Notes under the pieces: generated by a model
What the model saw: only the letters and a program-made list of their open reading frames with translations
Told to the model about the DNA's origin: nothing
Databases searched by the model: none
Translations under genes and position numbers: made by a program
Shown: positions 12,602 through 51,780 of the stretch, one piece after another
Position numbering within the stretch: position 1 is the stretch's first letter
How the letters are laid out: each line of letters starts with the position of its first letter
Source: Aplysia californica
Taxonomy: Eukaryota
Assembly (NCBI RefSeq): GCF_000002075.1
Contig: NW_004797369.1
Coordinates: forward strand, 929,623-982,870
Direction of reading: 5' to 3'
Length of the DNA stretch: 53,248 nt

Positions 12602-14407
12602 TTATTTCGTCTTTCTGTGGACAAGAAATTGCCATATCCTATAGAAATCATCAAAAACTAGAATCCCAAACACTGGCAAAAACGTGCAGGCAAACACGAC
12701 AAAACCAACTGAAGTGCAGGACGGTCTGGGGTCTATAGCGGATGTTTTACTCCTAAGTTTTCTGGAGAGGTTCGCTTTAGGTACGTGGAGAGACCTCTGG
12801 ATGATGGCAATCTTCGAGGACAAGACTGTTTCATTTAGTAAGTCCTGAAAATTCTTAGAGTCAAGGAGACATGTGCACGGGCACAAATTCCCTGGACGTT
12901 TTGAAACTGGGACTTGAGACGTTTCCTCTAAAGTCTGTGTATGATTGTCGCGAGACGTCGTCACCTCTGTACTCGTCAAATGACGCTCACACGACTCAGT
13001 GTTAGCGTCAGAAGATTTGTAAGTTGGAAGTGAAACAGCCCAGCCGAGGACAGCGTTATCAGCACTAAACATGGAACCACTGAAAGAACAACGCTCACCA
13101 TTCACTTTGATTTTATTCCCAGTTGTAATTGTAGTGATGAAAAATTCTCTAGAGCAATAGCGATGAGTCTCTAGCACTTCAAGCGGTTCAGATGATGTGT
13201 ACACTTTTCCAATAGGCACACTTACATTAATTTCTATTATACATTCGCATAGCGCTGTAATCAAAATGTGGACATTTGTGTCATCAAACATAGCAATCTC
13301 TGAATGAGTGCTCCACTCAGGTATAGGATATAGCACTGCACAGGACGAATCAAAATGGCTTTTACCTGTTCCATTTAAGAGTGGCATAAAATACTGTAGA
13401 ACTAAGATAGGACCAGTGGCGTGCAGGTACGTAACTGTGTCTCCTAACTGAAATGAGAAAAATGTAGAAGTATTTTTAGAAGTGTTTTCTTTCATCTCGA
13501 TATGCTCCAGACCGGAAAGAGTTGTAGACGGAGAGACGTACGCAATTTTGATGAGAGAATCTTTATCGTCATTACGAAAAGGTGCTAAAACATAGTCTTG
13601 CCCTAAAGCAGACACAGGAGGCAATTGCTCTATCATCATATCTTTATAATTGCACGGGACAGTCCTTATAAAAACACAGTCAAAATTCGCTCCAGCGATG
13701 ACAGCTACAGGGCTCTCTGCCCTGACCCAAGTACCTGTTAGGTCAGCTCCTTCACCCAAGATTTGCAGAACATCTAAAGGCTCCAGAGACTCTCGTAAAT
13801 ACTGCCCAGAATAGAAAATTGTTGTCTTTTTGTAAGTGATAGTACTCTCAGCGGGTTCGAAGGCAAACTCGATAGTGACATCATTGAATCCTTCTGAGTT
13901 CACGACGAGAAGGAAAGAAGACAAATGTACACTTTCGGTGACCACTAAATATTCACAGGATAGCAAACTGACGGGCATGACATTGAACGCTCCAGCACTT
14001 TTGCTGGTAGATTCATGTATTTCAAGTTTCAAACTTCTTGCCTGGACGACAACCTGAGAGGTGGAGTTCACTATGATTCCCTGTTTTTTCCCTATGCCAG
14101 TTTTCTTGAAATGAACCAAATGCTCCAGATTAAGCAGCCATTGCTCGTTTGAGACGGACGTAAAGTTGTGTGAATATTTCTGAGTCTGTATTTCACCTGA
14201 TGAAGTCTTACGTGCGGGTGCTGTTACAGTGACCTCGACGTTCTGAACAAAGTCCTGTGAGAGAGGCGAGATGGCCAATGAAGCAACGGCGTGTTTGACA
14301 TGTTTTGGGAACGCTAGAACGTACTGGATTTGCGTCTCACCAAAGATGCCTGAAATAATCGCTGCAAAGCACAAACACCAATGTAATCCTCCAGATGTAG
14401 AGCCCAT
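12602..14407 (-). CDS. IgGFc-binding (FCGBP N-terminal-like) domain type I membrane protein, paralog 1 (601 aa)
   Basis: Uninterrupted ORF. The ATG at 14407 is aligned with the paralog starts (an in-frame upstream ATG at 14449 is also possible). Signal peptide MGSTSGGLHWCLCFAAIISGIFG. FCGBP-N-like motifs DLTGTWVRAESPVAVIAG and C...MIEQLPPVSALGQDY. TM VGFVVFACTFLPVFGILVF. Confidence 0.9.
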   Translation of the reverse strand: MGSTSGGLHWCLCFAAIISGIFGETQIQYVLAFPKHVKHAVASLAISPLSQDFVQNVEVTVTAPARKTSSGEIQTQKYSHNFTSVSNEQWLLNLEHLVHFKKTGIGKKQGIIVNSTSQVVVQARSLKLEIHESTSKSAGAFNVMPVSLLSCEYLVVTESVHLSSFLLVVNSEGFNDVTIEFAFEPAESTITYKKTTIFYSGQYLRESLEPLDVLQILGEGADLTGTWVRAESPVAVIAGANFDCVFIRTVPCNYKDMMIEQLPPVSALGQDYVLAPFRNDDKDSLIKIAYVSPSTTLSGLEHIEMKENTSKNTSTFFSFQLGDTVTYLHATGPILVLQYFMPLLNGTGKSHFDSSCAVLYPIPEWSTHSEIAMFDDTNVHILITALCECIIEINVSVPIGKVYTSSEPLEVLETHRYCSREFFITTITTGNKIKVNGERCSFSGSMFSADNAVLGWAVSLPTYKSSDANTESCERHLTSTEVTTSRDNHTQTLEETSQVPVSKRPGNLCPCTCLLDSKNFQDLLNETVLSSKIAIIQRSLHVPKANLSRKLRSKTSAIDPRPSCTSVGFVVFACTFLPVFGILVFDDFYRIWQFLVHRKTK

Positions 14408-17400
14408 TATAATAAAAGGATTGTGAAAAGAACTTCTTTCAAGATCCATGCTACGTCTGGTGTGGATGACGCATCCAATGTTGCAATAGACTCTGGATCT
14501 ATAACATTATTATTCTTAGCTACGGTGAGCGTACTGCCGCATACTATATGGTTCTTGTCTAGTTATTCGTAACCAAACCAAGCATTAGCGTCTGCATAAC
14601 AGGTGTCTTTTGACTTCCGACAGTTAAGTAACACAAGCGTAGGCGTAGGTCGTTGGTGGGCAATGTGGTGCGATTTTCTCCTTCTTTCATATCAAGCATC
14701 TGTCTCCATTATCTCTACAACTGCTTTTCTTTGTAAGTTACTCTCTCTAGCAACACAGTTAATTGTTTGGCTCTTATATGACCTAATTGTTGTGCAAGTG
14801 CCATTAAGCACTTACCAAAACTAAACTAAAAATAAAGAATCCCCAATTTAAGTCTTATGCCCAGGTTCCAGGCAGGAGAATGATTTGGCTCACAGTTCCT
14901 ACCGTATACATGCACAATTCTGAATGGCTATGAGCTTCTAATAGTAGACAACGGGGATCAGGTGTATCTATTTGTTATCTCATCAAGTATTGGTGAGGCT
15001 ACGAGCATACCTCAAGTCTTTTTTCAATTTTAACCACCTAGTTACAGAAGCGCGAGTCACTAAATCACAATGAGCCTTTTGACGCGGAAAACGATGATCA
15101 GCACGAGAGTTTGTTCGTTATCACACCAACTGTTAGTTTGTCTTTATAACTGGTTCCTTATTACTTCGAACTCCACAGTGCGAAAGCATTTGTCAGGTCA
15201 CGAGTTCCAGTGTAATAATAAAACACACACAATCCTAAATCACTACGAACCCATTGTCGTAGACAGTACAGATGTAGTCTATGTGTTTGTCATCATCATG
15301 TATCTTTGTGATTTCATAACTGATGAACATTTACGACGAAATCCTAGATACACAGATATTAGTCAAAAGCTCAGGCACCAGGCGGGGTTGCCGGCAGGTG
15401 GCTGATTTGTTGGTGTTTTCTACACATCGATCTGGCCCGCCTCCTCTCCACTTACGCGCACACTGCAGATGTGATTCCTTTTCAATTTAGTGCAGTGGTT
15501 TATCGCAAACCGCCAAGCAGAAACGTTTTTTTTTATTTGGGGGGGGGGGGGGGGGGGGGAGGGACTCACAGAAGAAGTGACAACGGCACAGATGAGATCT
15601 TTTTCCTGACCTATTTGACCTATTATGCTCGCCTGGTGTTTCCACTATCAGTGCAACCAATATTGGGGCAGCTATGACGTCATGCACGAAAGACGATTTT
15701 TGTTTATTAAGAAGGAAGACCCCATCTAGACCTTTACCGAAAAAGAAATAACACCGCCTGCATGCAGATGTGTTTGATATTCTGTGTAAATTTAAACCTG
15801 TTATATACATGCATATAATTCTGGTGGAGTCGACATTAGCGAAACTTTTCGTAAGAAACCACTGACTCTATAGGACTCAAAATTTAAAATGAAGGCAGCA
15901 TTCAGTACCCCTAAGAGCACAAGTTTGCCATATTTTCACAATTTAGAACTTAAGAATTTACAAAAATGTAGGTTTCGATAGTTAACATTGTTATAAAACA
16001 CTCTAGAATGAAATCAGTCCTCTATTATCCCACTGTTTAAGATATTATGAGCGTCCGGCGCTCAGTATAAGTTCAAAACTGCGTTGGTAAAAGTTTCCGG
16101 GAATCCCTAAAGCAGTTATGAGAAAAAGGAGGAGGGGATTGGGGAAGGGGGGGGGGGTCCTCCAGTGGCAGATTTGTCAGTTAGCTCAGGCTCATAGTTT
16201 CGTCAAACATGTGTTGATGAAATTGCATTTAGGTGGACAGTTACTGGGAAGAGTCCTTTTGCAAGACACGGTGACCATCGCTTTAAAACAGGGTGCTGCA
16301 CAGCGGCGACCAGCAACGGTAATTATGTGTGAATTGTCTCTTTGTAATGTTGCGTGTTATTCATGCTTATATGTATTTGTGTATTTATGTACCTAATTAT
16401 ATAACAAATTTCCCGAAATGATCAATAAAGATGAATTTATCATTTTTATCCTTTATTTTCTTATTCAGTAGATATAGTATTCCAAGGATAATAGTGACAA
16501 GGAGACTATCGTCAATTGATTAGTTGTGCCTGAAGTGGAGTTCGAAGGCAATGCATGATCGTCTAAGCTCTAGCTCTGGCTCCACGTTATCGTGCTTAAT
16601 GCACGCAGGCAGCTTGTTTCCTTTTCTGATATATTAAAATTACGAACCACGTACCTCATTTTTTTTAAAGCGGCTCTTGGGGTGCCAATGAAATGCTATA
16701 TTTTTCTATATTGTCTAGGGAAGATGGTTATACAATAACCACTGCTGTATTTACTATTGAGCTTACATTATTATGCACTACATATTATGTATATATGAGT
16801 AGATAGCTNNNNNNNNNNNNNNNNNNNNNNNNNNNNNNNNNNNNNNNNNNNNNNNNNNNNNNNNNNNNNNNNNNNNNNNNNNNNNNNNNNNNNNNNNNNN
16901 NNNNNNNNNNNNNNNNNNNNNNNNNNNNNNNNNNNNNNNNNNNNNNNNNNNNNNNNNNNNNNNNNNNNNNNNNGCAATCACCTTTTCAAACAACCACTCT
17001 CCTCCAATGCGAATATAATANNNNNNNNNNNNNNNNNNNNNNNNNNNNNNNNNNNNNNNNNNNNNNNNNNNNNNNNNNNNNNNNNNNNNNNNNNNNNNNN
17101 NNNNNNNNNNNNNNNNNNNNNNNNNNNNNNNNNNNNNNNNNNNNNNNNNNNNNNNNNNNNNNNNNNNNNNNNNNNNNTATGATTAAGANNNNNNNNNNNN
17201 NNNNNNNNNNNNNNNNNNNNNNNNNNNNNNNNNNNNNNNNNNNNNNNNNNNNNNNNNNNNNNNNNNNNNNNNNNNNNNNNNNNNNNNNNNNNNNNNNNNN
17301 NNNNNNNNNNNNNNNNNNNNNNNNNNNNNNNNNNNNNNNNNNNNNNNNNNNNNNNNNNNNNNNNNNNNNNNNNNNNNNNNNNNNNNNNNNNNNNNNNNNN

Positions 17401-21523: not shown

Positions 21524-22757
21524 CCATACTTATANNNNNNNNNNNNNNNNNNNNNNNNNNNNNNNNNNNNNNNNNNNNNNNNNNNNNNNNNNNNNNNNNN
21601 NNNNNNNNNNNNNNNNNNNNNNNNNNNNNNNNNNNNNNNNNNNNNNNNNNNNNNNNNNNNNNNNNNNNNNNNNNNNNNNNNNNNNNNNNNNNNNNNNNNN
21701 NNNNNNGGACGTGCACAATTATTTTTTTGTTGTTATCTCACAAATTACAAAGAAAGACGGAAAAGCTCACAATGATGATGATACGAAAGAATTTTTATTC
21801 ATGTTGATATTCACTTGAGAAAATGACTAACCATCAATGTCTATTAGATGTGAGGTATTCTGAATTTAATTGCAAGGATCTTCTTTGCTGCTTCCAGAAA
21901 ATTAATATTGTGGAACTCATAATATCATTACTTTAAAATTACAAAGTTCTATCTGACATTTTTGACCGTTTTGTATTACTAAGACCACGAGGTTGGAAAC
22001 CAAAGTACTATCTGCTCTAAAAGAATCGTAAGATTATTCGGAGTTGTTAATCAAGATATCCAGAGAATTGCTTTCGAAAAAGTTTGATACGTCGTGAAAC
22101 TAAATAATTTTAACTTGCAAATTTATACCATCGTCCACTTAGAGCCTGGGTTGGCCCTGACAGGCAGAATTGATTAGGTAAATAAGGTCGATTAGGGTTT
22201 GCAATATACCATTATTATAACCCTGGAAACGAACTCATTCATGATCTATCACGCATTACTATGATGTAGCTTGAGTTAAAAGTTGTGTTTTTTCTTTTTT
22301 GGGTGGGGGGGGGGGCTGTGTTTTCTGTTGTTCTTTTTGTTTTTCTCAATAGAACCACCTGTCACACTTTCCACGTCTGTGGTCGATGGAGGGGGTTAAA
22401 TTATGTCTACAAACCTACATCTAGGCAACACCTTAAAACTACGCCACTCAAAGCTTTTGAGGAGGAAAGATAAAAAGAGAAATACAAAAACGATTTTTTG
22501 AGCGAAATGTTAATTTTAAACGCAAACAACACATCTTTTTCATACTTATTTCTTTGACCCTAGCAGATCCGAATACTCACATAGANNNNNNNNNNNNNNN
22601 NNNNNNNNNNNNNNNNNNNNNNNNNNNNNNNNNNNNNNNNNNNNNNNNNNNNNNNNNNNNNNNNNNNNNNNNNNNNNNNNNNNNNNNNNNNNNNNNNNNN
22701 NNNNNNNNNNNNNNNNTTTTGTTCTTCTTTATTTGGGGGGAAGGGGTGGTCTTTGAG

Positions 22758-24953
22758 CTATCTACGGAGAAGCCAACGTAAAGCCTTGTAACAATCATTT
22801 AGTATTAGAATTCCAAATATTGGTAAAATCGTGCAGCCAAACACGACAAAACCAATTGAAGTACTGGATGGCCTGTGGTCTATGGCGCACATTTTACTCC
22901 TCACTCTTCTTGAGAGGTTCGCCCTAGGAACGTGGAGAAAGCTCTGGATGGCTGCCCTCTTTGAGGACAAGAATGGCATTGTCTCATTTAGCAGATCTCG
23001 ATAATTCTGAGATCCAGAAAGACATGAACATGGGCACAAGATGAATCTGATCTTTGAAATCGGGCTCTGAGATATTTCCTCGACAGTATTTTTGTTATCA
23101 TCTTTGGCTACTGTCAATATTCTACTCCAAAACTTTATGTTATCGCGAGTAGACTCTGGTGTCACCGGAGATGTTTGCTCAACAGTTTGTCTGTTATTAT
23201 CGTGGGATGCTTCCGGTATTCTACTCAAAACCGTAATGTCTTTTTCAGTAGCCTCGGGTGTCCCCTGTGTTGTTTCCCAAATAGTTAGATCGTTATTATC
23301 GTTAGATGATTCCCCAACAGTTAGACCGCCATTATCGTTAGATGTTTCCTCAACAGTTAGACTGTTATTATCGTTAGACGTTTCCTCAAAAGCTGGACCG
23401 TTGTTATCGTTAGATGTTTCCGATATTCTACTCGAAACCGTGACGTCTTCTTCAGTAGACTTGAGTGTCGCCTGTGTTGTTCCCGCAGCTGTTGTGAGGC
23501 TCTTCATGTTGGATTTCTGTACCTCTGTACTCGTCAACTGAAGCTCACAAGATGTTGTGTTGTCATCAATGGGTTGAAAGGTTACCAATGGAACGGCCCA
23601 ACCCGTTTTGTCTCGGTGAGTAGCCACAACGACACCACTGAACAAACATTCGTCACTGTTTACAAAAATTTTATTTAATTTTGTGCTCGAGGTAATGATC
23701 ATTTGTCTTGAACAATAACGATGTTCACGTTTTGCTCTTGTCTTGAACTCTTCAACAGATACTCCAATCTTAATTTCTTTTATGCACTTGCACAAAGCAA
23801 CGATTAACGTTATTAGATTCATGTCATCAAAAGGTAATATTTCAGCATGAGTTCTCCATTTGGAGAGAGGATATATAACTGTCACTGATGAGTCAAAGAA
23901 AGTGGTGTGCTTCAAGGCCACAACATACTGTAGAACTAACACAGGTGCAGAAGCGTAGAGATAAACTATCGAGTCTCCGTTTAGTTGAAAAGTGAAAAAT
24001 GTGGGAAAATCTTGAGACGTGTTCACATTTATCAGAACATTGTCCAGACCAAAAACAGTCGTCGATGGACTGGTGTATCCGATTTTAACAAACGATTTAA
24101 TACTGGAGTTGACAAAAGGTGCAAAAACGTAGCTTTGCCCTAAAGAACACACAGGGGGCAATTGCTCGACTGCCATGTCGAGTGTACTACACAAATCCCG
24201 CTGTATCCACACGCAGCTGAAATCTGTTCCTGTGATGACAGCTACTTTTCTCTCTGCCCTGACCCATGTACCTGTAAGGTCAGTCTGTTTTCCCAAAATT
24301 TGCAAAACATCTAATGGACCTAAAGATTCAGGCAAAACCTGACCGGAATGCAAAATAATATCAGTGCTTCCGTTATTGTAAATGATTTCTCTTTGTGCTG
24401 GTTGAAGGCTCAATTCAATTATGACGTCATTGGATCCATCGGGGTTAACGACAAGTAGAAAACAAAACGAAGACGAACATTCTGTGACCACTACGTATTC
24501 ATGAGATAATAGAGTAGTGGGCATTACATTAAAGGCCCCAGCACTTTTTTTAAAGTCCTCAGCCATTCTGACTTTCAAACTTTTAGCCCGAACGACCAGC
24601 TGAGATGTCGAAGTAACCATGATACCTTGACTCTTCCCTATGCCTGACATTTCAAAATGAACCAAATACTCCAGGTTCAGAAGCCATTGCTCGTTTGAGG
24701 AGGACGAAAAGTTGTGTGAATATTCCTGAGTCCGTATTTCACCTGATGCCGTCTTACGTGCGGGTGCTGTTACAGTGACCTCGATGTTCTGAACAAAGTC
24801 CTGTGAGAGGGGTGAGATGGCCAATGAAGGAATGGCGTGTTTGACATGTTTTGGAAAGGCTAAAACGTACTGAAATTGCTGGTCCGCAAAGATGCCGGTA
24901 ATAATCATAGCAAGGCACAAACACAGAAGTAATTCTTGAAATGTTGAAGCCAT
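22758..24953 (-). CDS. IgGFc-binding domain type I membrane protein, paralog 2 (731 aa, long repetitive stalk)
   Basis: Uninterrupted ORF. The first ATG is at 24953 (the ORF-track start is a GTG). Signal peptide MASTFQELLLCLCLAMIITGIFA, motifs DLTGTWVRAERKVAVITG and VEQLPPV, mucin-like repeat stalk, TM IGFVVFGCTILPIFGILIL. Confidence 0.9.
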   Translation of the reverse strand: MASTFQELLLCLCLAMIITGIFADQQFQYVLAFPKHVKHAIPSLAISPLSQDFVQNIEVTVTAPARKTASGEIRTQEYSHNFSSSSNEQWLLNLEYLVHFEMSGIGKSQGIMVTSTSQLVVRAKSLKVRMAEDFKKSAGAFNVMPTTLLSHEYVVVTECSSSFCFLLVVNPDGSNDVIIELSLQPAQREIIYNNGSTDIILHSGQVLPESLGPLDVLQILGKQTDLTGTWVRAERKVAVITGTDFSCVWIQRDLCSTLDMAVEQLPPVCSLGQSYVFAPFVNSSIKSFVKIGYTSPSTTVFGLDNVLINVNTSQDFPTFFTFQLNGDSIVYLYASAPVLVLQYVVALKHTTFFDSSVTVIYPLSKWRTHAEILPFDDMNLITLIVALCKCIKEIKIGVSVEEFKTRAKREHRYCSRQMIITSSTKLNKIFVNSDECLFSGVVVATHRDKTGWAVPLVTFQPIDDNTTSCELQLTSTEVQKSNMKSLTTAAGTTQATLKSTEEDVTVSSRISETSNDNNGPAFEETSNDNNSLTVEETSNDNGGLTVGESSNDNNDLTIWETTQGTPEATEKDITVLSRIPEASHDNNRQTVEQTSPVTPESTRDNIKFWSRILTVAKDDNKNTVEEISQSPISKIRFILCPCSCLSGSQNYRDLLNETMPFLSSKRAAIQSFLHVPRANLSRRVRSKMCAIDHRPSSTSIGFVVFGCTILPIFGILILNDCYKALRWLLRR
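23281..23423 (-). repeat. Coding 36-bp (12-aa) tandem repeat x4 in the stalk of paralog 2
   Basis: SETSNDNNGPAF / EETSNDNNSLTV / EETSNDNGGLTV / GESSNDNNDLTI. Confidence 0.9.
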
Positions 24954-30438: not shown

Positions 30439-32382
30439 TTACATATCGAATATCATAGTTTTTTGTTTCTTTCGTAACCCACGGTAAAGCCAATGCAAAA
30501 CATTCCAGCAGTCACTAAATATCAGACAGCCAAATATTGGCAAAAACGTGCAGGCAAACACGAGGAAACCAACTGAAGTACTCGATGGTCTGTGGTCTAT
30601 GGCGCACATTTTGCTCCTTATTGTTCTAGAGAGGTTTGCTCTAGGAACGTATAGATAGCTGCTGATGGCTGCAATCCCTGAGGATAAGAATGTCTCATTT
30701 AGCAGGTCTCGATAGCCCTGAGGCAGAAGAACACATTTACATGGACACAAGTTAGCTCTCATTTGTGGGACTGTTCTGGTATGTATTTCTTTAGTGAAAG
30801 TCTTGGTTGTGTTGACTTTAGATGCCGTTGTCTCTGTTTCTGAAGTCAGAGTTTCCCAAAATGCTTTGGCATCAGTGAAGTTGAGAGTCGCAGGAGACGT
30901 GTCTTCCAGTTGGTGTATGTTATTAAAGACAGGCGTCACAACCTCCGTGCTTGTCATCTCAGGCTCACGCGACATCGTGTCATCATTAGCTGATTTAAAA
31001 CTAGCAAGTGGAGCTGCCCAACCACTAAATGATCTTCCAAGTGCAATGATCAAACCGCTGAATGAGCACCGGTCGCTGTTTACTTGGATAGTTTCCTCCG
31101 TTGTGTGTGAAGTAATAAACATTTCTCTCGAGCAAAACCGGCATGTAGTTCCTTCATCTACGTGTTCCGGCGGTGTGTACAGTTCTTGAAACTCAACTCC
31201 AACGTCTATTTCTGTTATGCAATAACACAACGCTGTAATTACCATTTGAAACTTGATGTCGTCAAAGGGTAATATTTCTGCACGAGTGCCCCATTTGGAA
31301 AAAGGATAAAGAACAACGGCCGACGAATCAAAAGTCAAGCCAATATCATATTCAGGTAGGACAAGGACATACTGTAGCACCAATACGGGTGCCGAAGCTC
31401 TTAGATAGACCACATTGTCCCCAGACACTTTTACAGAGAAAAATGAGGAAGTATTTTGAGACGTGTTCACATTCATATCAATATGTTCCAAACCTAAAAA
31501 AGTTGTTGAAGGAGAGGTGTATGCGATTTTGATGAAGGTATCCTTGCTACCGTAGTAAAAAGGGGCAAGAACATATTCGTGTCCTAACTCAGACACAGGC
31601 GGAAGCTGCTCGATCATCATATCTTTAGTCCTGCACGAAAGCCTCCTTAAATGTACACAGTCAAAATTGGTCCCAGCGATGACAGCTACGGGATACCATG
31701 CTGTGACCCATGTACCTGTGAGGTCAGTCCTTTCGCCCAAGATTTGCAAAACATCTAATGGCTCCAAATATTCTCGTAAAGATTGCCCAGAATAGTAAAT
31801 ATCATCTATCTCTTTGTATGCGATACTACTATTTTCTGGATGTAATTTCAAGTTAATAGTGACGAAATTATCGCTTTCTGCATTCACAACAAGAAGGATA
31901 CAGTCCGCTGTTACACATTCCGTGACCACTAAATATTCATGGGATAACAAGCTAATGGGCAAAACATTGAAACTTCCAGCGCTAGTAAAACCCGCAGTTT
32001 CCCTACTTCTAGCCTGGACAGCAAGCCGAGAAGTGGAAGATACTAAGATTGCCTGCTTCTTCCCTTTGCCAGACTCCGTGAAATGAACCAAATACTCGAG
32101 GTTAAGAAACCATTGCTCGTTTGAGTTGGACGTAAAACTGTGTGTATACTCTTGAGTCAATGTTTCACCTGATGAGGTCGTATTTACGGGTGCTTTTACA
32201 GTGACCTCGATGCTCTCCTCAACTAAGTCCTGTGAGACCACCGAGATGGCCAAAGAAGGAACAGCGTTTGTGGTGTGTTTTGGAAAAGCTAGAATATACT
32301 GGAAATGTTCTTTTGCAAAGACATCTGCTATAATCACAGCAAAGCACAAATATCGCTGTAGTCCTTGAAATGTTGAACCCAT
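30439..32382 (-). CDS. IgGFc-binding domain type I membrane protein, paralog 3 (647 aa)
   Basis: Uninterrupted ORF from ATG. Signal peptide MGSTFQGLQRYLCFAVIIADVFA, motifs DLTGTWVTAWYPVAVIAG and MIEQLPPVSELGHEY, Thr-rich stalk, TM VGFLVFACTFLPIFGCLIF. Confidence 0.92.
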   Translation of the reverse strand: MGSTFQGLQRYLCFAVIIADVFAKEHFQYILAFPKHTTNAVPSLAISVVSQDLVEESIEVTVKAPVNTTSSGETLTQEYTHSFTSNSNEQWFLNLEYLVHFTESGKGKKQAILVSSTSRLAVQARSRETAGFTSAGSFNVLPISLLSHEYLVVTECVTADCILLVVNAESDNFVTINLKLHPENSSIAYKEIDDIYYSGQSLREYLEPLDVLQILGERTDLTGTWVTAWYPVAVIAGTNFDCVHLRRLSCRTKDMMIEQLPPVSELGHEYVLAPFYYGSKDTFIKIAYTSPSTTFLGLEHIDMNVNTSQNTSSFFSVKVSGDNVVYLRASAPVLVLQYVLVLPEYDIGLTFDSSAVVLYPFSKWGTRAEILPFDDIKFQMVITALCYCITEIDVGVEFQELYTPPEHVDEGTTCRFCSREMFITSHTTEETIQVNSDRCSFSGLIIALGRSFSGWAAPLASFKSANDDTMSREPEMTSTEVVTPVFNNIHQLEDTSPATLNFTDAKAFWETLTSETETTASKVNTTKTFTKEIHTRTVPQMRANLCPCKCVLLPQGYRDLLNETFLSSGIAAISSYLYVPRANLSRTIRSKMCAIDHRPSSTSVGFLVFACTFLPIFGCLIFSDCWNVLHWLYRGLRKKQKTMIFDM

Positions 32383-34599: not shown

Positions 34600-34617
34600 G
34601 CACACATACGCGCGCCC

Positions 34618-34648
<31 letters not shown>

Positions 34649-34793
34649 AACACATACACACATACACACCCGCAAACACACACGTGCAAACACTCACAAA
34701 CACCTACACACTACATACTACACAAACACATACACATATACATACATACATACATACATACATACATACATACATACATACATACATACATAC
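34600..34793. repeat. (CACG)n/(CA)n/(TACA)n compound microsatellite
   Basis: Directly visible. Confidence 0.9.
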
Positions 34794-35291
34794 GGGGGCT
34801 CTCGTGGCCTAGAGGTTAAGGTGTTGGCCTCTTATTCAAAGGTCCCGGGTTCGATTCCGGGTAGCGACCAAAAAATGTTCTTCTCTAAAAGTGTCTCCTT
34901 TCACATCCTTTCCTGATCTCTAACAATGTTCTGTTGTCTGCTTTCATTTCCACTTTCTGCCCCACCCCCTCACCTCCTTTGCCCCCTCCTCTGGGCTCCT
35001 GACTCATTCTGCAGCCTTTCTACTGCTACTCCTTGGCTCCTCCTTACTGTTGTCTATCTGCCACACCTAGCCTTCTCGGACAAGGGCGAAAAATCTCGGA
35101 GGGCCCGTGTGCAAGTTGCGCACGTTAAAGATCCCTTGGTGGTCTAAAATCGATAAGAGTAGGCTTCGGCCATCACCCGGGCAAAATTCAAAATTTCCTA
35201 CCAACTGAAAATATTAGGATTGTCCCGCGCGCTCATATGACCTATGCAGTTGCGAGCGCCGTAAAACACTTTACAAAAACAAAAACAAAAA
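34794..35291 (+). mobile_element. tRNA-derived SINE, family A, copy 2
   Basis: A box TGGCCTAGAGG, B box GGTTCGATTCC, body colinear with 7627-8140, (CAAAAA)n tail. Confidence 0.88.
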
Positions 35292-35397
35292 ATACATACG
35301 TACATACGTACATACGTACATACGTACATACGTACATAACGTACATACGTACATACGTACATACGTACATACGTACATACGTACATACGTACATACA
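35292..35397. repeat. (TACATACG)n microsatellite
   Basis: Directly visible. Confidence 0.95.
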
Positions 35398-35608
35398 CGT
35401 GCATGTATCGATGTAGGCCTATTGATGCGAAGTACTTCGACCCTGACTATCAGGGCCAGTCCAGGCTTAGCGGTATACAAAGTCCATAGGCAGACAAGCG
35501 TAAGAACTCAATCAAGATTCTCCCCACGCGGGATCCTATGCCTTCTGCTTTGGAAGGCAAATCGTTTAATCGCTGCACTTGAGACGGCGATACGATGATG
35601 TATTCTTA

Positions 35609-35728
35609 TACGGGGTGCCCACTACGGCTGGATCGGGCCGATCGCCCGACTAGATCGCCTGAAACTGAAAACAAACACGTTTGTTTTTGAGGCGATCGAA
35701 TCGGGCCCATCCGTAGTGGGCACGCGTA
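35609..35728. mobile_element. 120-bp hairpin MITE with TTA target-site duplication (PIF/Harbinger-Tourist-like)
   Basis: TIRs TACGGGGTGCCCACTACGG and CCGTAGTGGGCACGCGTA, with TTA at 35606-35608 and 35729-35731. The interior is also self-complementary. Confidence 0.75.
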
Positions 35729-35963
35729 TTATATACACTTAACAAACGAGAAAAACAATCTCTGTTCACTTCAGAGTCGTCTACCAAATGAAATAACTTT
35801 CTCTAATAATCTTTTTTTAGTTTTGTTTTGTTTAGTTTTTGGATGCTTTTTTTTCTAAGCCGGTGCAAGGGAGGAGAGGGGTAGCGGTTGGGTAGATAAT
35901 GAAGAATGGCGTGTATGCCTTGTGTTTGGTATGGTTGTTTACTTTAAGAACACATTGCTCACT

Positions 35964-36150
35964 GGTGTCTTTAATGTAGCGATTAGGCACTTCGCTATCC
36001 CCCGCTGGAAACTCTAGTTCGATTCCTGAGTGGTGAGACCTTTAGTTATGTATCTCAGTCTTTCCTGTGGGATGTTGTGTCCCTCTCAGCCTGGTTTAGC
36101 GTGACAGACAGGCCCAAGCCCACCTCCAAAAAGTTCTAAATTGTGTTGGT
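35964..36150 (+). mobile_element. tRNA-derived SINE family B, interrupted near its 3' end
   Basis: GTAGCGATTAGG and TAGTTCGATTCC box-like motifs. Body similar to 40884-41113 (CCCTCTCA..., CTAAATTGTGTT). Confidence 0.55.
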
Positions 36151-36222
36151 AAGATAAGAGGTAAGATAAGATACATCTTTATTGTCCAGATCCTGGCACA
36201 TTGGTTTCTTGTTTCACCACGT

Positions 36223-36299
<77 letters not shown>

Positions 36300-37232
36300 T
36301 GCACACACACACGTAGGCTTACAATCACAAGCATAATATGACTGAGCAGCAATATAAACAATAATACTCTTAAGCTAGATACACACTCAATATTATTCGG
36401 ATGCATGCTCTAAGGTCGTGAGTATACTTATACAAGATGGTTAAGATGGAAGCATTTTGATAGATGATGGTAAAAATGACCTTCTATATCTTTCTTTGTT
36501 ACAGATCAGAAGCCTAGGTCTTTTATTTCCTACTGATGTTTTTATTTGAGGGAACAAGGGATCTTTATTGTGTAAAAAGATGGAATTAAATTTTTTTGTG
36601 CAAGCTGTTATGTACAATTCATCCAAGTAGGGGAGTGTAGATGTTGAAATTTTACATGCTTTCCATATTAGTCGATTTAATTTCTCTTTATTTTGTTGTC
36701 TTGTGCTCCCAGCCCATGCTGTTATACAAAAATTGATCATACTTTCGATGGTTGCATGGCAGAATATGGACATCAATGTTTTCTCAACTTTAAAATACTT
36801 TAGCTTCCTTAGAAAAAATAGTCTTTTTTTCACTTTATTTATGCAGGAGAGAGGTGTGGACACGCCAGTTGAGTTTGTTGTCTATTGTAACTCCCACATA
36901 CTTATAGTCTGACACTTACTCGACGTTTTCACATTTAATTTCGAGTGGCTGCAGGGGCAGTTTCTTTATTTTAAAATCAAAAACAAGTTCTTTTGGTTTT
37001 TTTCACATTTAAAAGCAGCTTACGATTTTCACACCATTCAGCAAAGTTAAGTACAAAATTCCGGTTCTGGTAAACGGTTTTTGTTATGGTCAGTCTGAAT
37101 TAGCCCAATTATGGTTGAATCATCTGCAAATTTTATCAACTTAACGTTACTGTTGTTTATTTGACAATCGTTCGTGTAAAGTGTGAATAAAACTGGTGAC
37201 AAAACACATCCTTGAGGGGCGCCTGTATTTGT
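36151..37232 (-). mobile_element. 5'-truncated LINE, Rex/Babar (CR1-L2 group)-like RT and C-terminal region
   Basis: TGAPQGCVLSPVLFTLYTNDC, KFADD, and KKRLFFLRKLK...IESMINFCITAWAG (DUF1891-like). The 3' end has AATAAA and (TATCT)n-like repeats. Frameshifted, with an embedded (CA)n at 36225-36310. Confidence 0.85.
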
Positions 37233-37527
37233 ATGTTGATGAAGAATGATGGGGGTGTAAGAACACCTAGGTTGAAAAATAATAATAACATTGCCCTTTA
37301 TGAGTATGCGTCCAGATACATGGATACTTGCATTAGGCAAAAACAGCGTTAAATCGTAAAGACTGCACATTAATTTACAGTGTGGCTGAGATCACCGTAT
37401 CGTCGTGTGAAAAGATAAGTCTTAGAGAAACTTTGAGAAGCAAAAAAGAAACACTCATGTAAAAATCAGCAAGTTGTTAATCGACCGTGCCACGCCTTTT
37501 CTTGATGGACCTTGAATGGGATAATCC

Positions 37528-37842
37528 AGTCACTTCTTGTTTAGACAACCCGGAACTGGATAGTCGAGTCGAATCACATCCTGTTTAGACAGGTCATGAA
37601 CTGATTAGTCGAGTCAAGTCACATTGTACAGGTGAAAACCGTTCGTTTCTTGACAAAATGGGCCTGGAACTGGTTAGTCGAGTCTATACACTTTTTGCTT
37701 AGACGGACCCTGAACTGGTTAGTCGAGTCGAGTCACTTCCTATTTAAACAGGTCCTGAACTGGTTAGTTTCTAGACTAACTGTGATCCCAACTGGTTAGT
37801 CGAGTCGAGTCACTTCATGTCCAGATGAACCCTGAACTGATG
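37528..37842. repeat. ~45-bp minisatellite (about 6 degenerate units) immediately 3' of paralog 4
   Basis: Consensus GAACTGGTTAGTCGAGTCGAGTCACTTCCTGTTTAGACAGGTCCT. Confidence 0.85.
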
Positions 37843-37880
37843 CCTCGTCACTGTTTGTCGACTTTTGTTCTCTTAAGTAA

Positions 37881-39593
37881 CTAATGGTAAAGCCAGCATA
37901 AAGCTTTGTACAAATCGCATAGCACCAGGCTCCCAAATATCGGGAAAAAAGTACAAACAAACACGAGGAAACCAACTGCAGTACTTGACGGCCTGTCATC
38001 CGTGGCGGACGTTTTGCTCCTTACTGTTTTGGAGAGGTCCTCTTTTAGAACATAGAGATAACTCTGGATGGCTGCTATCTCTGAGGACAAGGCTGTCCTA
38101 TTGAGCATGTCTCGATGAGTATAAAAAGCTCGTGGACATGAACAGGGGCACAAGTTAACTCTGACTAGTGGGGTTGGGCTCGGGCTTACTTCATCAACTC
38201 TGTAGTGGAAATTCACAAGTGGCACGGCCCAACCAGAAACTGATCTTTTGACATTAATGATAGAACCAGTAAACGGACAACTTTCACCGTTTACTTCGAT
38301 TTTATTCTCTAAATCGTTTGAAGAAATGAGTATTTCTTTAGAGCAATAACGAGAGGTTCCCCCCTCATCTTCGGGTTCCGAAAGTGTGTTCAGTTCTGTA
38401 ATATCTACTCCAATTTGTATTTCATGTATACAGAGGCAGGATGCAATGATTATCATTTCATAATTGTTGTCGTCAAAAGTTAAAATTTCTGCACGATTGA
38501 CCCATTTGGATATAGGGTATAGAACAGTAGCTGACAAATCAAAAAGAATTGTTTCGTTGAACGGTGGCAAAACAAACTGTACAATCAACACAGGGTCAGA
38601 GGCATGAAGATGAGTAATAGTGTGGGCTTCTACTTGAAAATAGAGAAAAGTGGATGTATTTCGAGATGTGCTTTCTTTCATCTGAATATGTTCCAGGCCA
38701 GAAAAAGTTGTGGAGGGAGTTACGTAAACAATTTTGACGAAAGAAACCTTATTTTCGTTAGAAAAAGGCGTTAGAACATAATCTTGTCCCAAATCAGAAA
38801 CAGGGGGTAACTGCTCAATAAGCATATCTCTAAATTTGCACTTCTCATTCCCCATAAACACACAGTCAAAACTGGCCCCAGCAATGACAGCTACAGGTCT
38901 TTGTGCCCTGACCCAAGTACCTGTGAGGTCAGCTCCTTCACCCAAGATTTGCAGAACATCTAATGACTCCAAAGATTCTCGTAAAGATTGCCCCGAATAG
39001 AAAGTAATTGTATTTTTGTAATTGATACTACTGTCTGCGGGTTCGAAGGCAAACTCGATAGTGACATCATTGAATCCTTCTGAGTTCACGACGAGAAGGA
39101 AAGAAGACAAATGTACACTTTCGGTGACCACTAAATATTCACAGGATAGCAAACTGACGGGCATGACATTGAACGCTCCTGCAGATTTACCAGAACTTTC
39201 AGTTATCAGTATTTTAAAAGTTTTTGCATGAACCACAAGACCAGATGTGGACGTTATTAGAATTCCCTGGTTCTTCCCGATACCAGGCTTCTGGAAATGA
39301 ACCAAGTACTCCAGATTGAGCAGCCATTGTTCGTTTGAGGCGGATGTAAAGTTGTGTGAATATTCCTGAGTCTTTATTTCACCAGATAAAGACGTACGTG
39401 CGGGTGCTGTTACAGTGACCTCGACGTTCTGAACAATATCCTGTGAGAGAGGTGAAATGGCCAATGAAGGAACGGCGTAGTTGAGATGTTTTGGAAACGC
39501 TAACACGTACTTGACCAGCTCTTCAGCAAATATATCTGTAATGATCACAGAAAGGCACAAACACCGATGCCACTCTTGAATTTTTATGTTCAT
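37881..39593 (-). CDS. IgGFc-binding domain type I membrane protein, paralog 4 (570 aa, minimal stalk)
   Basis: Uninterrupted ORF. The first ATG is at 39593 (the ORF-track start is a GTG). Signal peptide MNIKIQEWHRCLCLSVIITDIFA, motifs DLTGTWVRAQRPVAVIAG and LIEQLPPV, TM VGFLVFVCTFFPIFGSLVL. Confidence 0.9.
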   Translation of the reverse strand: MNIKIQEWHRCLCLSVIITDIFAEELVKYVLAFPKHLNYAVPSLAISPLSQDIVQNVEVTVTAPARTSLSGEIKTQEYSHNFTSASNEQWLLNLEYLVHFQKPGIGKNQGILITSTSGLVVHAKTFKILITESSGKSAGAFNVMPVSLLSCEYLVVTESVHLSSFLLVVNSEGFNDVTIEFAFEPADSSINYKNTITFYSGQSLRESLESLDVLQILGEGADLTGTWVRAQRPVAVIAGASFDCVFMGNEKCKFRDMLIEQLPPVSDLGQDYVLTPFSNENKVSFVKIVYVTPSTTFSGLEHIQMKESTSRNTSTFLYFQVEAHTITHLHASDPVLIVQFVLPPFNETILFDLSATVLYPISKWVNRAEILTFDDNNYEMIIIASCLCIHEIQIGVDITELNTLSEPEDEGGTSRYCSKEILISSNDLENKIEVNGESCPFTGSIINVKRSVSGWAVPLVNFHYRVDEVSPSPTPLVRVNLCPCSCPRAFYTHRDMLNRTALSSEIAAIQSYLYVLKEDLSKTVRSKTSATDDRPSSTAVGFLVFVCTFFPIFGSLVLCDLYKALCWLYH

Positions 39594-49139: not shown

Positions 49140-49223
<84 letters not shown>

Positions 49224-49275
49224 GGAGTGGGGCTGGCGTTTTCTAATAATTGTACTGTTGTTCTTTGTCCAGTTG

Positions 49276-49351
<76 letters not shown>
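49140..49351. repeat. (TG)n and (GA)n microsatellites
   Basis: Directly visible at 49140-49220 and 49276-49351. Confidence 0.95.
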
Positions 49352-49354
<3 letters not shown>

Positions 49355-49950: not shown

Positions 49951-51780
49951 TTAATTGCTTTCCACAGTGGTTCTCTGAAGTATCCAACGGTAAAGGAGAC
50001 GCAAAACCCTAAAACAATCGCTTAACACCAAACTCCCAAATATTGGCAAAAACATACAGCCAAACACGACAAAACCAACTGAAGTGCTGGACTGCCTGTT
50101 GTCTATGGCAGACATTTTGCTCCTCACTCTTTTAGAGAGGTTCGCTGCAGGAACGTAGAGATAACTCTGGATGGCTGCAGTCTCTGTGGACAAGACTGTC
50201 TCATTTAGCAGATCTAGAAAACTCTGAAATCCAAGAAGACATTTACATGGGCATATCTTTTTTCGAACTTTTGAGACCGAGATTTGAGAAGTTTCTTCAA
50301 AAATGTTCGTGTAGTTGACGTGAGATGTCGTCATCTCTGTAGTGGTCATCTGAGGCTCACAGAACGTAGTATTATCGTAGGCCGATCTGAAAGGAACGAG
50401 TGGGATGGCCCAGCCACTAAGTGCTTTCTGAAATGCAATGATCAAACCACTGAATATACATCCTTCACTTTTTACTTGGATGGAATTTACCTGTTTGTTT
50501 GACGTAATAAACATTTCTCGTGAGCAAAACTGGCACTCGCCCCCTGTGTCTGCAGATGTTGTAGGTGTGTTCAGTTCTTGAATGGCAACTCCGACTTTTA
50601 CTTCATGTATACACTTGCACAGTGCGGTAATTATCATTTGGAATTTTATGTCATTAAAAGTTAAAATTTCGGCATAAGTGCCCCATTTTGAGATAGGAAA
50701 TAGAACTGTTGCTGACGTATCAAACATGTGGTTTTCGTCGTGCAGAAGTGGAATAACATACTGTACAACCAATACTGGGGAAGAAGCGCGCAGATGGATG
50801 ACCGTTTCCCCGTCGATTTTCAAAGAGAAAAATGTAGACGTAGTTTGAGATGTGTTTGCGCTTATTTCTATATTTTCCAAACCAAAAAAAGTCGTTAAAG
50901 GAGTAATAAACCCAATTTTGACGAAAGAATCTTTACTACCGTTGGCAAAAGGTGCTAAAACATATTCTTGTCCTAAAACAGACACAGGGGGCAACTGCTC
51001 GACAGTCATGTCTCTGTCAACGCACAAGGGCCCTCTCAGCCATACACAATCGAAATTAGCCCCTGCAATGACCACTACGTTCCTTTGTGCCTGGATCCGT
51101 GTACCTGTGAGATCAGTTCTACTACCCAAAATTTGCAGAACATCTAATGGGCCTACAGGTTCTCGTACCATTTGTCCTGAATACAATGTATTATTTTTGT
51201 CTTTATACATAACAGTATTGTTTGCTGGGTGCAGTTTTAGTTCAATAGCGACTTCATTTTCTCCCTCAGGATTCACAACGAGAAGAAAGCAAAATGAAAC
51301 GATACATTCTGTTACCACTAAATATTCATTAGATAGCAATCGAACGGACAAGACATTAAACGCTCCAATACTTTTAATTGTAAGATTTTTCCTTCTGATT
51401 TTTGAACTTCTTGCTTGGACAACCAGCTGAGCTGTGGAATTTACGACAATTCCTTGTTTCCTCCCTACACCTGAAAGGTCGAATTGAGCCAAATTCTCCA
51501 GGTACAGCAGCCATTGGTCGTTTGAATTGGACGTAAAGTTGTGTGTATATTTCTGAGTCTGTATTTCACCTGATGAAGTCTTCCGAGCGGGTGCTGTTAC
51601 AGTGACTTCGATGTTCTGCTCAAAGTCTTGTGAGAAAGGCGAGATGGCCAATGAAGGAATGGCGGTGTGGAGATGTTTTGGAAACGCTAGAACGTACTCG
51701 AACTGTTTGTCAGCTAAGATGTCTACAATAATCACAGCAAAGCACAAACATAGAAGTAATCCTTGAAGTGTTGAAGCCAT
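49951..51780 (-). CDS. IgGFc-binding domain type I membrane protein, paralog 5 (609 aa)
   Basis: Uninterrupted ORF. The first ATG is at 51780 (the ORF-track start is a TTG). Signal peptide MASTLQGLLLCLCFAVIIVDILA, motifs DLTGTRIQAQRNVVVIAG and VEQLPPVSVLGQEY, TM VGFVVFGCMFLPIFGSLVL. Confidence 0.9.
   Translation of the reverse strand: MASTLQGLLLCLCFAVIIVDILADKQFEYVLAFPKHLHTAIPSLAISPFSQDFEQNIEVTVTAPARKTSSGEIQTQKYTHNFTSNSNDQWLLYLENLAQFDLSGVGRKQGIVVNSTAQLVVQARSSKIRRKNLTIKSIGAFNVLSVRLLSNEYLVVTECIVSFCFLLVVNPEGENEVAIELKLHPANNTVMYKDKNNTLYSGQMVREPVGPLDVLQILGSRTDLTGTRIQAQRNVVVIAGANFDCVWLRGPLCVDRDMTVEQLPPVSVLGQEYVLAPFANGSKDSFVKIGFITPLTTFFGLENIEISANTSQTTSTFFSLKIDGETVIHLRASSPVLVVQYVIPLLHDENHMFDTSATVLFPISKWGTYAEILTFNDIKFQMIITALCKCIHEVKVGVAIQELNTPTTSADTGGECQFCSREMFITSNKQVNSIQVKSEGCIFSGLIIAFQKALSGWAIPLVPFRSAYDNTTFCEPQMTTTEMTTSHVNYTNIFEETSQISVSKVRKKICPCKCLLGFQSFLDLLNETVLSTETAAIQSYLYVPAANLSKRVRSKMSAIDNRQSSTSVGFVVFGCMFLPIFGSLVLSDCFRVLRLLYRWILQRTTVESN

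What the first reader, a model, noticed from the sequence alone, without database searches (positions are those of the whole stretch)
12602..51780. Tandem array of five single-ORF, membrane-anchored IgGFc-binding-domain genes: candidate diversified receptor cluster
Seen: five co-oriented intact ORFs with identical architecture (23-aa signal peptide, FCGBP-N-like domain, S/T stalk, conserved juxtamembrane module, one TM, short tail), spaced about 5-10 kb apart amid heavily decayed TEs. Known: vertebrate FCGBP is a large secreted multi-exon mucus protein with vWD/TIL repeats, none of which are present here. Inference: all five ORFs remaining open while strongly diverged implies selection on a family of surface recognition molecules (immune, symbiont/food, gamete or self recognition). 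This is loosely analogous to the polymorphic transmembrane gene clusters of Biomphalaria snails. The function is not demonstrable from sequence, and the array may extend beyond the window.
Basis: partly seen in the sequence, partly recalled or inferred. Interest (0 to 1): 0.85.

Follow-up and report, generated by a model that had tools for sequence, protein, structure and literature searches.

The report
Sea-hare array of membrane-anchored FCGBP_N genes
The sea hare Aplysia carries a tandem array of at least 13 intact single-exon genes for cell-surface glycoproteins that join an "IgGFc-binding" N-terminal domain to an unnamed mollusc-wide membrane anchor; the genes are real and kept by selection, but what they bind is unknown.

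Summary
Five co-oriented minus-strand ORFs (570-731 codons from the conserved Met) contain no N. They are 55-61% identical, and each passes Pfam PF17517 (IgGFc_binding, also called FCGBP_N) at E 1e-22 to 1e-28.

The genome is Aplysia californica. The array starts in the window and runs about 141 kb along the scaffold:
- 12 intact copies, plus one more on another scaffold
- two copies interrupted by assembly gaps
- three decayed fragments

RefSeq already lists paralogues as "uncharacterized protein". I found no paper on them.

Paralogue similarity stops at the CDS ends, and dN/dS is 0.30-0.44 with no window above 1. So purifying selection is shown and diversifying selection is not.

All Aplysia copies form one clade. 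Single, intron-containing relatives with the same architecture occur in other gastropods and in bivalves.

The C-terminal module (CxCxC, helix, basic motif, TM ending in Asp) is absent from Pfam. It is shared with Aplysia Ig-array and EGF-array genes and with oyster C-type-lectin proteins.

A confident AF2 model of the ectodomain is all-beta and has no solved relative.

Two polyA RNA runs gave no reads at the two gene ends tested, so expression remains unproven.

Most likely these are surface binding or adhesion proteins, possibly shed. An immune-recognition role is unsupported.

The parts
12602..14407 (-). Gene 1. CDS from the conserved Met, 601 aa. The ORF continues upstream to an ATG at 14449, giving 615 aa.
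   Evidence: PF17517 hit at E 6.9e-27, over about 13277-13990.
22758..24953 (-). Gene 2. 731 aa, with the longest stalk in the window (186 aa).
   Evidence: PF17517 hit at E 3.9e-24, over about 23823-24536.
23271..23421 (-). 36-nt (12-aa) tandem repeat, 4.2 copies, inside the stalk of gene 2.
   Evidence: self-hit.
30439..32382 (-). Gene 3. 647 aa.
   Evidence: PF17517 hit at E 6.6e-26, over about 31291-31971.
37881..39593 (-). Gene 4. 570 aa from the conserved Met, with a short stalk. The ORF continues upstream to 39659.
   Evidence: PF17517 hit at E 1.1e-28, over about 38448-39176.
49951..51780 (-). Gene 5. 609 aa. Its ectodomain (residues 24-470) was modelled at pLDDT 91.
   Evidence: PF17517 hit at E 2.4e-22, over about 50641-51363.
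49951..50268 (-). C-terminal anchor module of gene 5: CxCxC, NET sequon, helix, LS[RK]xxR[SRN]K basic motif, AxDxRxS, TM ending in an invariant Asp, and a short tail. The equivalent modules are at 12602-12898, 22758-23039, 30439-30750 and 37881-38159.
   Evidence: Not in Pfam. The profile finds at least 49 places in the genome.
13851..13993 (-). 143-nt tract that is exactly identical to gene 4 at 39037-39179 (CDS nt 415-557 in both). Read as a gene-conversion footprint.
   Evidence: Background identity between genes 1 and 4 is about 77%.
34650..37250 (.). Intergenic repeat and TE remnants. High-copy, polyA-ended repeat reads map here. The ORF at 36441-36863 has an ALKBH8_N-type match; from my own knowledge, such matches often mark decayed non-LTR retrotransposon tails.

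Best explanation
The five ORFs are functional members of a tandem gene family that expanded in the Aplysia lineage. There are at least 13 intact copies, and about 141 kb of the array lies on one scaffold.

Each copy is a single coding exon encoding a type I membrane glycoprotein with these parts:
- a signal peptide
- an all-beta ectodomain of about 445 aa built around the FCGBP_N domain (PF17517)
- an N- and O-glycosylatable stalk of very variable length
- a C-terminal anchor cassette of about 95 aa
- a tail of 8-25 aa with membrane-proximal cysteines and no recognisable signalling domain

The anchor cassette is a mollusc-wide module that is unnamed in Pfam. It also tethers Ig arrays, EGF arrays and C-type-lectin ectodomains.

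Inferred mechanism: the FCGBP_N ectodomain is held off the cell surface on the stalk and binds an extracellular ligand, either a glycan or a protein, whose identity is unknown. The paralogues have diverged, under purifying selection, into distinct binding specificities. With no signalling tail, the output would come either through partners that engage the conserved juxtamembrane/TM cassette, or through release of the ectodomain by cleavage at the conserved basic motif about 14 residues outside the membrane.

Shown: the gene family, its architecture, selection, lineage-specific expansion and module sharing. Inferred: topology details, ligand binding, shedding and partner use.
For: - ORFs and domain hits.
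- Thirteen intact copies plus gap-interrupted and decayed copies.
- RefSeq models for four paralogues lie wholly inside single ORFs.
- Pairwise dN/dS is 0.30-0.44 and dS is 0.23-1.07.
- Nucleotide similarity between paralogues ends within about 30 nt of the CDS ends, and the flanks cannot be aligned.
- All Aplysia copies form one clade (99/89) against Elysia, Batillaria, Lottia and Haliotis.
- The same FCGBP_N plus module architecture occurs in Lottia, Patella, Haliotis, Batillaria, Babylonia, Elysia, Pinctada and Pecten.
- Those relatives have 2-4 coding exons and no family neighbour within 10 kb.
- The module is shared with Aplysia 5-6-Ig and 14-EGF single-ORF genes and with an oyster C-type-lectin protein.
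- The module is absent from Pfam and from PDB sequences.
- The AF2 ectodomain model has pLDDT 91.2 and pTM 0.92 and is all-beta.
- The C-terminal helix at 569-608 and the strongest hydropathy peak fall at the C-terminus in all 13 copies.
- The literature reports that FCGBP_N is typically N-terminal and extracellular and, in invertebrates, mostly occurs without VWD: PMC4948705.
Against: - No expression evidence was obtained. Two polyA RNA runs (about 1.5 Gb each) gave zero reads over the 5' end of gene 3 and over the 3' end and flank of gene 4.
- Each RefSeq paralogue cluster has a single member seen on one contig.
- The ligand is unknown, and no solved structure resembles the ectodomain (Foldseek TM at most 0.17; VIA Z at most 6.1).
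- The signal peptide and TM were not checked with dedicated predictors.
- The basic motif is a minimal RxxR or KxxR in the array, and a di- or tribasic RKK/RKR in other module bearers. Cleavage there is pure inference.
Confidence: 0.7

Rival explanations
1. Diversified recognition-receptor repertoire (immune, symbiont or food, gamete, or self recognition) evolving under diversifying selection. This would be functionally equivalent to the polymorphic TM1 clusters of Biomphalaria.
For: - It is a tandem cluster of signal peptide, binding domain, stalk, TM and tiny-tail genes, the same layout as the PTC1/GRC, PTC2 and LG5R genes (PMC7494358, PMC13712769).
- The expansion is lineage-specific.
- The locally highest pN values fall in segments that are lower-confidence in the model, probably loops.
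- There is gene conversion between non-adjacent copies.
- The module also anchors lectin and Ig ectodomains.
Against: - No 15-codon window has pN/pS above 1; the range is 0.23-0.87.
- Overall dN/dS is 0.3-0.44.
- No polymorphism or CNV data could be obtained.
- No immune-type signalling motif or Pfam domain was recognised in the tail.
- No homology to PTC genes was shown.
- The FCGBP_N ligand is unknown, and IgG binding is disputed (PMC11796319).
Confidence: 0.2
2. Membrane-tethered precursors of a secreted mucus or surface-coat component. The protein is made as a type I precursor and cleaved at the juxtamembrane basic motif. The FCGBP_N ectodomain with its glycosylated stalk then joins the mucus or glycocalyx, as with membrane-tethered mucins or ZP-type precursors.
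For: - The basic motif R/K-x-x-R-[SRN]-K, about 14 residues before the TM, is conserved in 12 of 13 copies. L003 has S at the first basic position but keeps the invariant R. A di- or tribasic version occurs in other module bearers.
- The stalk is a variable S/T/N-rich region that is partly tandem-repeated.
- FCGBP is a mucus protein, and FCGBP_N proteins are generally secreted (PMC4948705).
- The tail is very short.
Against: - No cleavage evidence exists.
- No SEA, ZP or GDPH element is present.
- The TM and the intracellular juxtamembrane residues are themselves strongly conserved (pN/pS 0.35-0.37). That suggests the anchor does more than act as a disposable tether.
Confidence: 0.25
3. Non-functional copies (dead retrocopies or pseudogenes) or annotation artefacts whose frames happen to be open.
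For: There are no introns in the CDS, whereas relatives have 2-4 exons. No RNA reads were found at the two gene ends tested. Decayed family fragments exist in the array.
Against: Thirteen frames of 570-850 codons remain open at dS up to about 1, and dN/dS is well below 1. The CDS is alignable while the flanks are not. True pseudogene fragments in the same array do carry stops.
Confidence: 0.03
4. Envelope-like glycoprotein genes of a transposable element or endogenous virus. The resemblance would be a type I glycoprotein with a basic cleavage motif and a C-terminal TM, sitting among TEs.
For: The genes are single-exon type I glycoproteins with an RxxR-type motif, and they lie among repeat remnants.
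Against: - No TE structure or conserved flanks surround the genes.
- The basic motif lies about 14 residues from the TM, leaving no room for a fusion peptide or heptad repeats.
- The ectodomain is a cellular FCGBP_N domain with intron-containing relatives in other molluscs.
- The anchor module is shared with cellular Ig and EGF genes.
Confidence: 0.02

Closest known systems
FCGBP_N / Pfam PF17517 domain proteins of invertebrates (Lang et al. 2016, PMC4948705)
   Same: There is a significant PF17517 match. The domain sits at the N-terminus behind a leader. No VWD-C8-TIL units are present, as in most invertebrate FCGBP_N proteins. The function of the domain is unknown.
   Different: Here the domain is fused to a stalk and a membrane anchor, the gene has a single coding exon, and it is amplified to at least 13 tandem copies. 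I found no description of this architecture or array in the searchable literature.
Vertebrate FCGBP (a mucus protein)
   Same: It shares the N-terminal domain family, and possibly an association with mucus or surface coats.
   Different: There are no VWD/C8/TIL assemblies, no GDPH autocleavage motifs, and no cysteine-knot-type multimerisation parts. These proteins are about 600 aa against 5405 aa (size from my own knowledge), and they are membrane-anchored.
Biomphalaria clusters of polymorphic single-pass transmembrane (TM1) genes: PTC1/GRC, PTC2, LG5R (PMC7494358, PMC13712769)
   Same: They are gastropod clusters of genes with a signal peptide, an extracellular binding domain with or without a disordered stalk, one TM and a tiny cytosolic tail.
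   Different: The ectodomains differ (FN3, Ig-like, Tie2-ligand-binding/EGF and fucolectin there; FCGBP_N here). No sequence homology was shown. Extreme allelic polymorphism and a resistance phenotype define those clusters, and neither is known here.
Membrane-tethered mucins and ZP-domain precursors, which are cleaved next to the membrane
   Same: There is a glycosylated stalk, a basic motif just outside the TM and a short tail, so shedding is plausible.
   Different: No SEA, NIDO/AMOP/VWD or ZP domain is present. Cleavage is untested.
Aplysia single-ORF Ig-array and EGF-array membrane proteins. RefSeq names three module-bearing Ig-array proteins 'CEACAM5-like', 'sialoadhesin' and 'hemicentin-1'.
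   Same: They share the homologous C-terminal anchor cassette (32% identity over 92 aa, E 5e-8, with the invariant C-C-C, LS, R, A-D-R-S, G and D positions). They also have a single large coding ORF.
   Different: Their ectodomains are unrelated, and they are dispersed rather than arranged in a long tandem array.

Membership tests
PF17517 IgGFc_binding (FCGBP_N) domain family | HMM match above Pfam's gathering score (25.6 bits) | tested here: met
   80-101 bits in all five window genes; 15 family loci in the genome exceed the cut-off.
PF17517 IgGFc_binding (FCGBP_N) domain family | N-terminal position behind a secretion signal (PMC4948705) | tested here: inconclusive
   The domain starts about 120 residues after a hydrophobic leader. 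The leader was judged by hydropathy and by eye only; no SignalP was available.
Vertebrate-type FCGBP orthologue | Repeated VWD-C8-TIL assemblies | tested here: not met
   the only hit is a sub-threshold VWD match (17.6 against 22.9 bits) in gene 4, and there is no C8 or TIL.
Vertebrate-type FCGBP orthologue | GDPH autocatalytic cleavage motifs | tested here: not met
   no GDPH in any of the 13 copies.
Biomphalaria-type polymorphic TM1 clusters (PTC) | Physical cluster enriched in single-pass TM genes with short tails | tested here: met
Biomphalaria-type polymorphic TM1 clusters (PTC) | Exceptionally divergent alleles, or presence/absence haplotypes | not testable with these tools
No population data were examined.
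Biomphalaria-type polymorphic TM1 clusters (PTC) | Sequence homology to PTC/GRC genes | not tested
The paper reports that PTC2 genes have no known domains (PMC7494358). Two word-based searches with the module returned only oyster or Aplysia proteins.
Mollusc C-terminal anchor cassette (unnamed; defined here) | CxCxC, then a helix, then LS..R[KRS][KR].SA.D.R.S, then G, then a TM ending in Asp | tested here: met
   Searches show the invariant C, C, C, L, LS, R, A, D, R, S, G and D positions across Aplysia FCGBP_N, Ig and EGF genes. One search finds at least 49 genomic matches.
Membrane-tethered mucins | SEA (or NIDO-AMOP-VWD) domain and a long PTS repeat domain | tested here: not met
   One search finds no such Pfam domains. 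The stalks are 25-287 aa with 12-34% S+T. Only gene 2 has a short 12-aa repeat.

The most novel reading that the evidence does not exclude
The roughly 95-aa C-terminal cassette would be a mollusc-specific functional module, for signalling-partner docking or regulated shedding. It would define a large and so far unrecognised superfamily of surface receptors with interchangeable ectodomains (FCGBP_N, Ig, EGF, C-type lectin, possibly WSC/Sushi). Within that superfamily, the Aplysia FCGBP_N array would be a diversified recognition repertoire, for example for microbes, settlement cues or mates, comparable in role to the Biomphalaria TM1 resistance clusters.
Probability: 0.15. Interest if true: 0.75.

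Novelty: new variant of a known kind. Interest (0 to 1): 0.42.

Why it matters
FCGBP_N is an ancient, widespread extracellular domain of unknown function, found from ctenophores to humans and in gliding bacteria. A compact, intronless, membrane-anchored, single-domain version in many diverged copies is a convenient system for finding what the domain binds.

The anchor cassette is not in Pfam and I found no paper naming it. It links at least three or four ectodomain classes across gastropods and bivalves. It could therefore be used as a search handle to catalogue molluscan surface receptors, including candidates relevant to snail-parasite interaction.

As it stands, the array is a typical lineage-specific expansion with no demonstrated function.

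Tried and rejected
- **First AF2 run.** The full-length protein with only the 13 paralogues as alignment gave pLDDT 47.5, and its Foldseek hits were meaningless. It was replaced by the ectodomain with an 85-sequence alignment.
- **Fold searches with the good model.** Foldseek gave TM at most 0.17. VIA-align wide gave a best Z of 6.1, matching single beta-sandwich or ferredoxin-like subdomains only. No fold assignment was made.
- **PDB sequence searches.** The family profile and the module profile both found nothing.
- **Expression.**
  - The look-up of sequencing runs listed no holder on record as RNA.
  - Two polyA raw-read runs had no reads on the two gene ends laid.
  - Two runs of unknown type (X14, X15) have contigs at depth 21-31 over 37191-37937, which is the 3' flank of gene 4 plus 57 nt of its CDS. 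These stop inside the CDS, and their word share can be explained by intergenic repeats, so I do not count them as expression evidence.
- **The look-up of encoding contigs.** P0010 and P0037 come from short contigs of unknown nature and show no polyA.
- **Codon-site tests.**
I therefore did no ancestral reconstruction by any other route.
  - Only pairwise and sliding-window counts are reported.
- **Word-based searches with the anchor module.** They returned only 5 and 3 proteins, which is too shallow to define its range or to link it to Biomphalaria PTC genes.
- **Literature searches.** Searches for the LOC identifiers and for module peptide strings found nothing relevant.
- **Other checks.** Rfam found nothing in the window. 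The TE-envelope and dead-retrocopy readings were rejected, as set out under the rival explanations.


Full report
**1. The observation**

The window holds five long minus-strand ORFs at 12602-14449, 22758-24998, 30439-32382, 37881-39659 and 49951-51810. The window's N runs were listed, and none lies inside an ORF. The closest are 22586-22716, which is 42 nt past the stop of gene 2, and 29228-30131, about 300 nt past the stop of gene 3. The reading frames therefore do not depend on any gap, and I filled none.

All five proteins pass Pfam PF17517 (IgGFc_binding) at 80-101 bits against a 25.6-bit cut-off. No VWD or TIL domain passes threshold. The proteins align over their whole length at 55-61% identity. 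The shared plan is:
- a conserved Met followed by a hydrophobic leader
- a conserved ectodomain
- a length-variable stalk
- a strongly conserved C-terminal block holding the top hydropathy peak
- a tail of 8-25 residues

**2. Source and extent**

Database hits name the organism as Aplysia californica. Four paralogues outside the window are RefSeq 'uncharacterized protein' entries: LOC118477443, LOC118477444, LOC106011385 and LOC106011380. Each of these lies wholly within one genomic ORF, so the coding region is a single exon as annotated.

The window is G000:C99:929623-982870. A six-frame search of the genome shows that the array begins with gene 1 and continues to C99:1,083,447. I extracted these copies:
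- 12 intact copies on C99
- one intact copy on C323, of 850 aa with a 287-aa stalk
- a near-duplicate on C1094 that is frameshifted and interrupted by a gap
- two copies running into assembly gaps (C99 at about 1,035k and 1,027k)
- three decayed fragments carrying stops (C99 at about 1,033k, 1,047k and 1,065k)

**3. Selection**

Among the 13 intact copies, the median pairwise dN is 0.31. For the 12 closest pairs dN/dS is 0.30-0.44, with dS from 0.23 to about 1.07.

A self-comparison of the window shows that paralogue similarity (68-78% nt) begins and ends within about 30 nt of the CDS, and that the flanks cannot be aligned. Thirteen open frames of 570-850 codons at this divergence, next to true pseudogene fragments that do carry stops, show that the proteins have been maintained by purifying selection.

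In 15-codon windows, pN/pS ranges from 0.23 to 0.87 and never exceeds 1. The highest pN values are at residues 121-135, 243-257 and 426-455, which mostly fall in lower-confidence segments of the model, probably surface loops. Diversifying selection is therefore not shown at this resolution.

Site-wise tests could not be run. A codon-model tree timed out.

Synonymous divergence is lower at both ends of the CDS. A 143-nt tract is exactly identical between genes 1 and 4 (CDS nt 415-557) against about 77% background identity, which indicates gene conversion.

**4. Relatives**

A full HMMER scan of 1.8 billion representative proteins with the 13-copy profile found 2312 hits at E of 0.001 or better, mostly through FCGBP_N. 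A subset matches from the domain through to the C-terminus. Look-ups place that subset in two groups:
- gastropods: Lottia, Patella, Haliotis, Gigantopelta, Batillaria, Littorina, Babylonia and Elysia
- bivalves: Pinctada and Pecten

Some of these carry one or two EGF domains between the FCGBP_N domain and the anchor. All are annotated as hypothetical or uncharacterized, or carry misnomers.

The genes in Haliotis, Elysia and Batillaria have 2, 3 and 4 coding exons, and no family neighbour lies within 10 kb.

In a protein tree, all Aplysia copies form one clade (99/89 support), together with one short contig from an ENA environmental (metagenome) assembly. The window's five genes branch deep and star-like. 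The copies at 1,006-1,081k form a younger subclade. So the array is a lineage-specific expansion of an intron-poor gene that lost its remaining coding introns.

**5. The C-terminal cassette**

The last roughly 95 residues have this order:
- CxCxC
- a conserved N-x-T sequon
- a predicted helix
- LS[RK]xxR[SRN]K
- A-x-D-x-R-x-S
- G, then a TM segment ending in an invariant Asp
- a short Cys- and basic-rich tail

This cassette has no Pfam match even at E up to 10 and no PDB sequence relative.

The same cassette closes proteins with other ectodomains:
- a C-type lectin in Saccostrea echinata
- unknown ectodomains in Saccostrea cucullata and Potamilus
- in Aplysia, single-ORF genes with 5-6 Ig domains or 14 calcium-binding EGF domains

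Three further module-bearing Ig-array proteins are named 'CEACAM5-like', 'sialoadhesin' and 'hemicentin-1' by RefSeq.

A profile of the cassette finds at least 49 places in the Aplysia genome, about 29 of them outside this family. One is a multi-exon FCGBP_N plus cassette gene on C446. The ESM Atlas points the same way, though weakly: its neighbours are mollusc-only, and they include WSC, C-lectin and Sushi clusters at TM 0.34-0.48.

In non-array bearers the basic motif reads RKK or RKR. In the array it is R/K-x-x-R-[SRN]-K.

**6. Structure**

With an 85-sequence alignment, the gene-5 ectodomain (residues 24-470) folds at pLDDT 91.2 and pTM 0.92. It forms an all-beta, multi-sandwich body with a small alpha/beta subdomain.

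Neither Foldseek (TM at most 0.17) nor an exhaustive VIA-align search finds a solved relative. The best VIA result was Z 6.1, with Ig-like adhesin or pilin domains matching 247-339 and ferredoxin-like folds matching 354-430. The FCGBP_N fold seems to have no experimental structure in the PDB copy searched.

**7. Expression**

No listed run is on record as RNA and also holds the locus.

I laid window 32050-38049, which spans the 5' end of gene 3, the intergenic region and the 3' end of gene 4. Two polyA RNA-seq runs of about 1.5 Gb each gave zero reads over both gene ends and over the 3' flank of gene 4. Reads fell only on high-copy repeat remnants between 34650 and 37250.

Two runs of unknown type hold contigs at depth 21-31 over 37191-37937. 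I regard that as inconclusive. The tissues of these runs are unknown, so this is absence of evidence only.

**8. Interpretation**

Shown:
- a real, selected, lineage-expanded family of predicted type I surface glycoproteins with an FCGBP_N ectodomain
- a shared anchor cassette that is mollusc-wide as far as sampled

Inferred:
- the ectodomain is displayed on a glycosylated stalk and binds an extracellular ligand
- the paralogues differ in specificity
- the output is either partner engagement through the conserved juxtamembrane/TM cassette or release by cleavage at the basic motif

The domain's name gives no functional guidance. IgG binding by FCGBP has been contradicted (PMC11796319). Lang et al. 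found that FCGBP_N in invertebrates occurs mostly without VWD and has unknown function (PMC4948705).

The comparison with the Biomphalaria TM1 clusters is architectural only (PMC7494358, PMC13712769).

**9. Verdict**

The genes are already annotated but uncharacterized, and I found no paper on the array or the cassette. I file it as a new variant of a known kind: an FCGBP_N protein and a lineage-specific TM1 cluster. Interest is moderate, and most of it lies in the unnamed anchor cassette and in the tractability of a compact FCGBP_N protein.

Noticed in passing
window 13851-13993 and 39037-39179: A 143-nt tract is exactly identical between the non-adjacent genes 1 and 4, against about 77% background identity. 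I read this as a gene-conversion tract. Shorter exact runs of 45-54 nt link other distant paralogues, and synonymous divergence is depressed at both ends of the CDS.
   Followed up: partly
G000:C11:845816-848032, C235:26563-28668, C394:698053-700101 and C1188:150142-152328 (loci L032, L034, L035, L033): Other Aplysia genes encode whole 5-6-Ig or 14-EGF_CA ectodomains plus the same C-terminal anchor cassette in one uninterrupted ORF of about 680-740 codons. Having Ig and EGF arrays in a single exon is unusual.
   Followed up: partly
G000:C446:328152-335080: A multi-exon Aplysia gene carries a PF17517 exon and, 6.4 kb downstream on the same strand, an anchor-cassette exon. It may be an intron-containing relative of the intronless array.
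   Followed up: no
window 34650-37250: Intergenic repeat remnants are covered at very high depth by RNA reads with polyA or polyT loose ends at 34875 and 36162 and with many fixed differences. These are SINE/LINE-like families that are transcribed elsewhere in the genome. The ORF at 36441-36863 has an ALKBH8_N-type match.
   Followed up: partly
window 23271-23421; G000:C323 copy (L013:707-3259): Stalk length varies from 25 to 287 aa between paralogues. Gene 2 has a 12-aa unit repeated 4.2 times. The C323 copy has 26 N-glycosylation sequons.
   Followed up: partly
L037 (Elysia marginata BMAT01005384.1), and P0015 (Plakobranchus): In sacoglossans, the single FCGBP_N plus cassette gene sits between OATP transporter genes. 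In Plakobranchus it is annotated as fused to one of them, which is probably a gene-model merge.
   Followed up: no
window 7627-8138 and 34794-35271: A dispersed repeat pair of about 500 nt at 80% identity. It is the only non-genic similarity found within the window.
   Followed up: no
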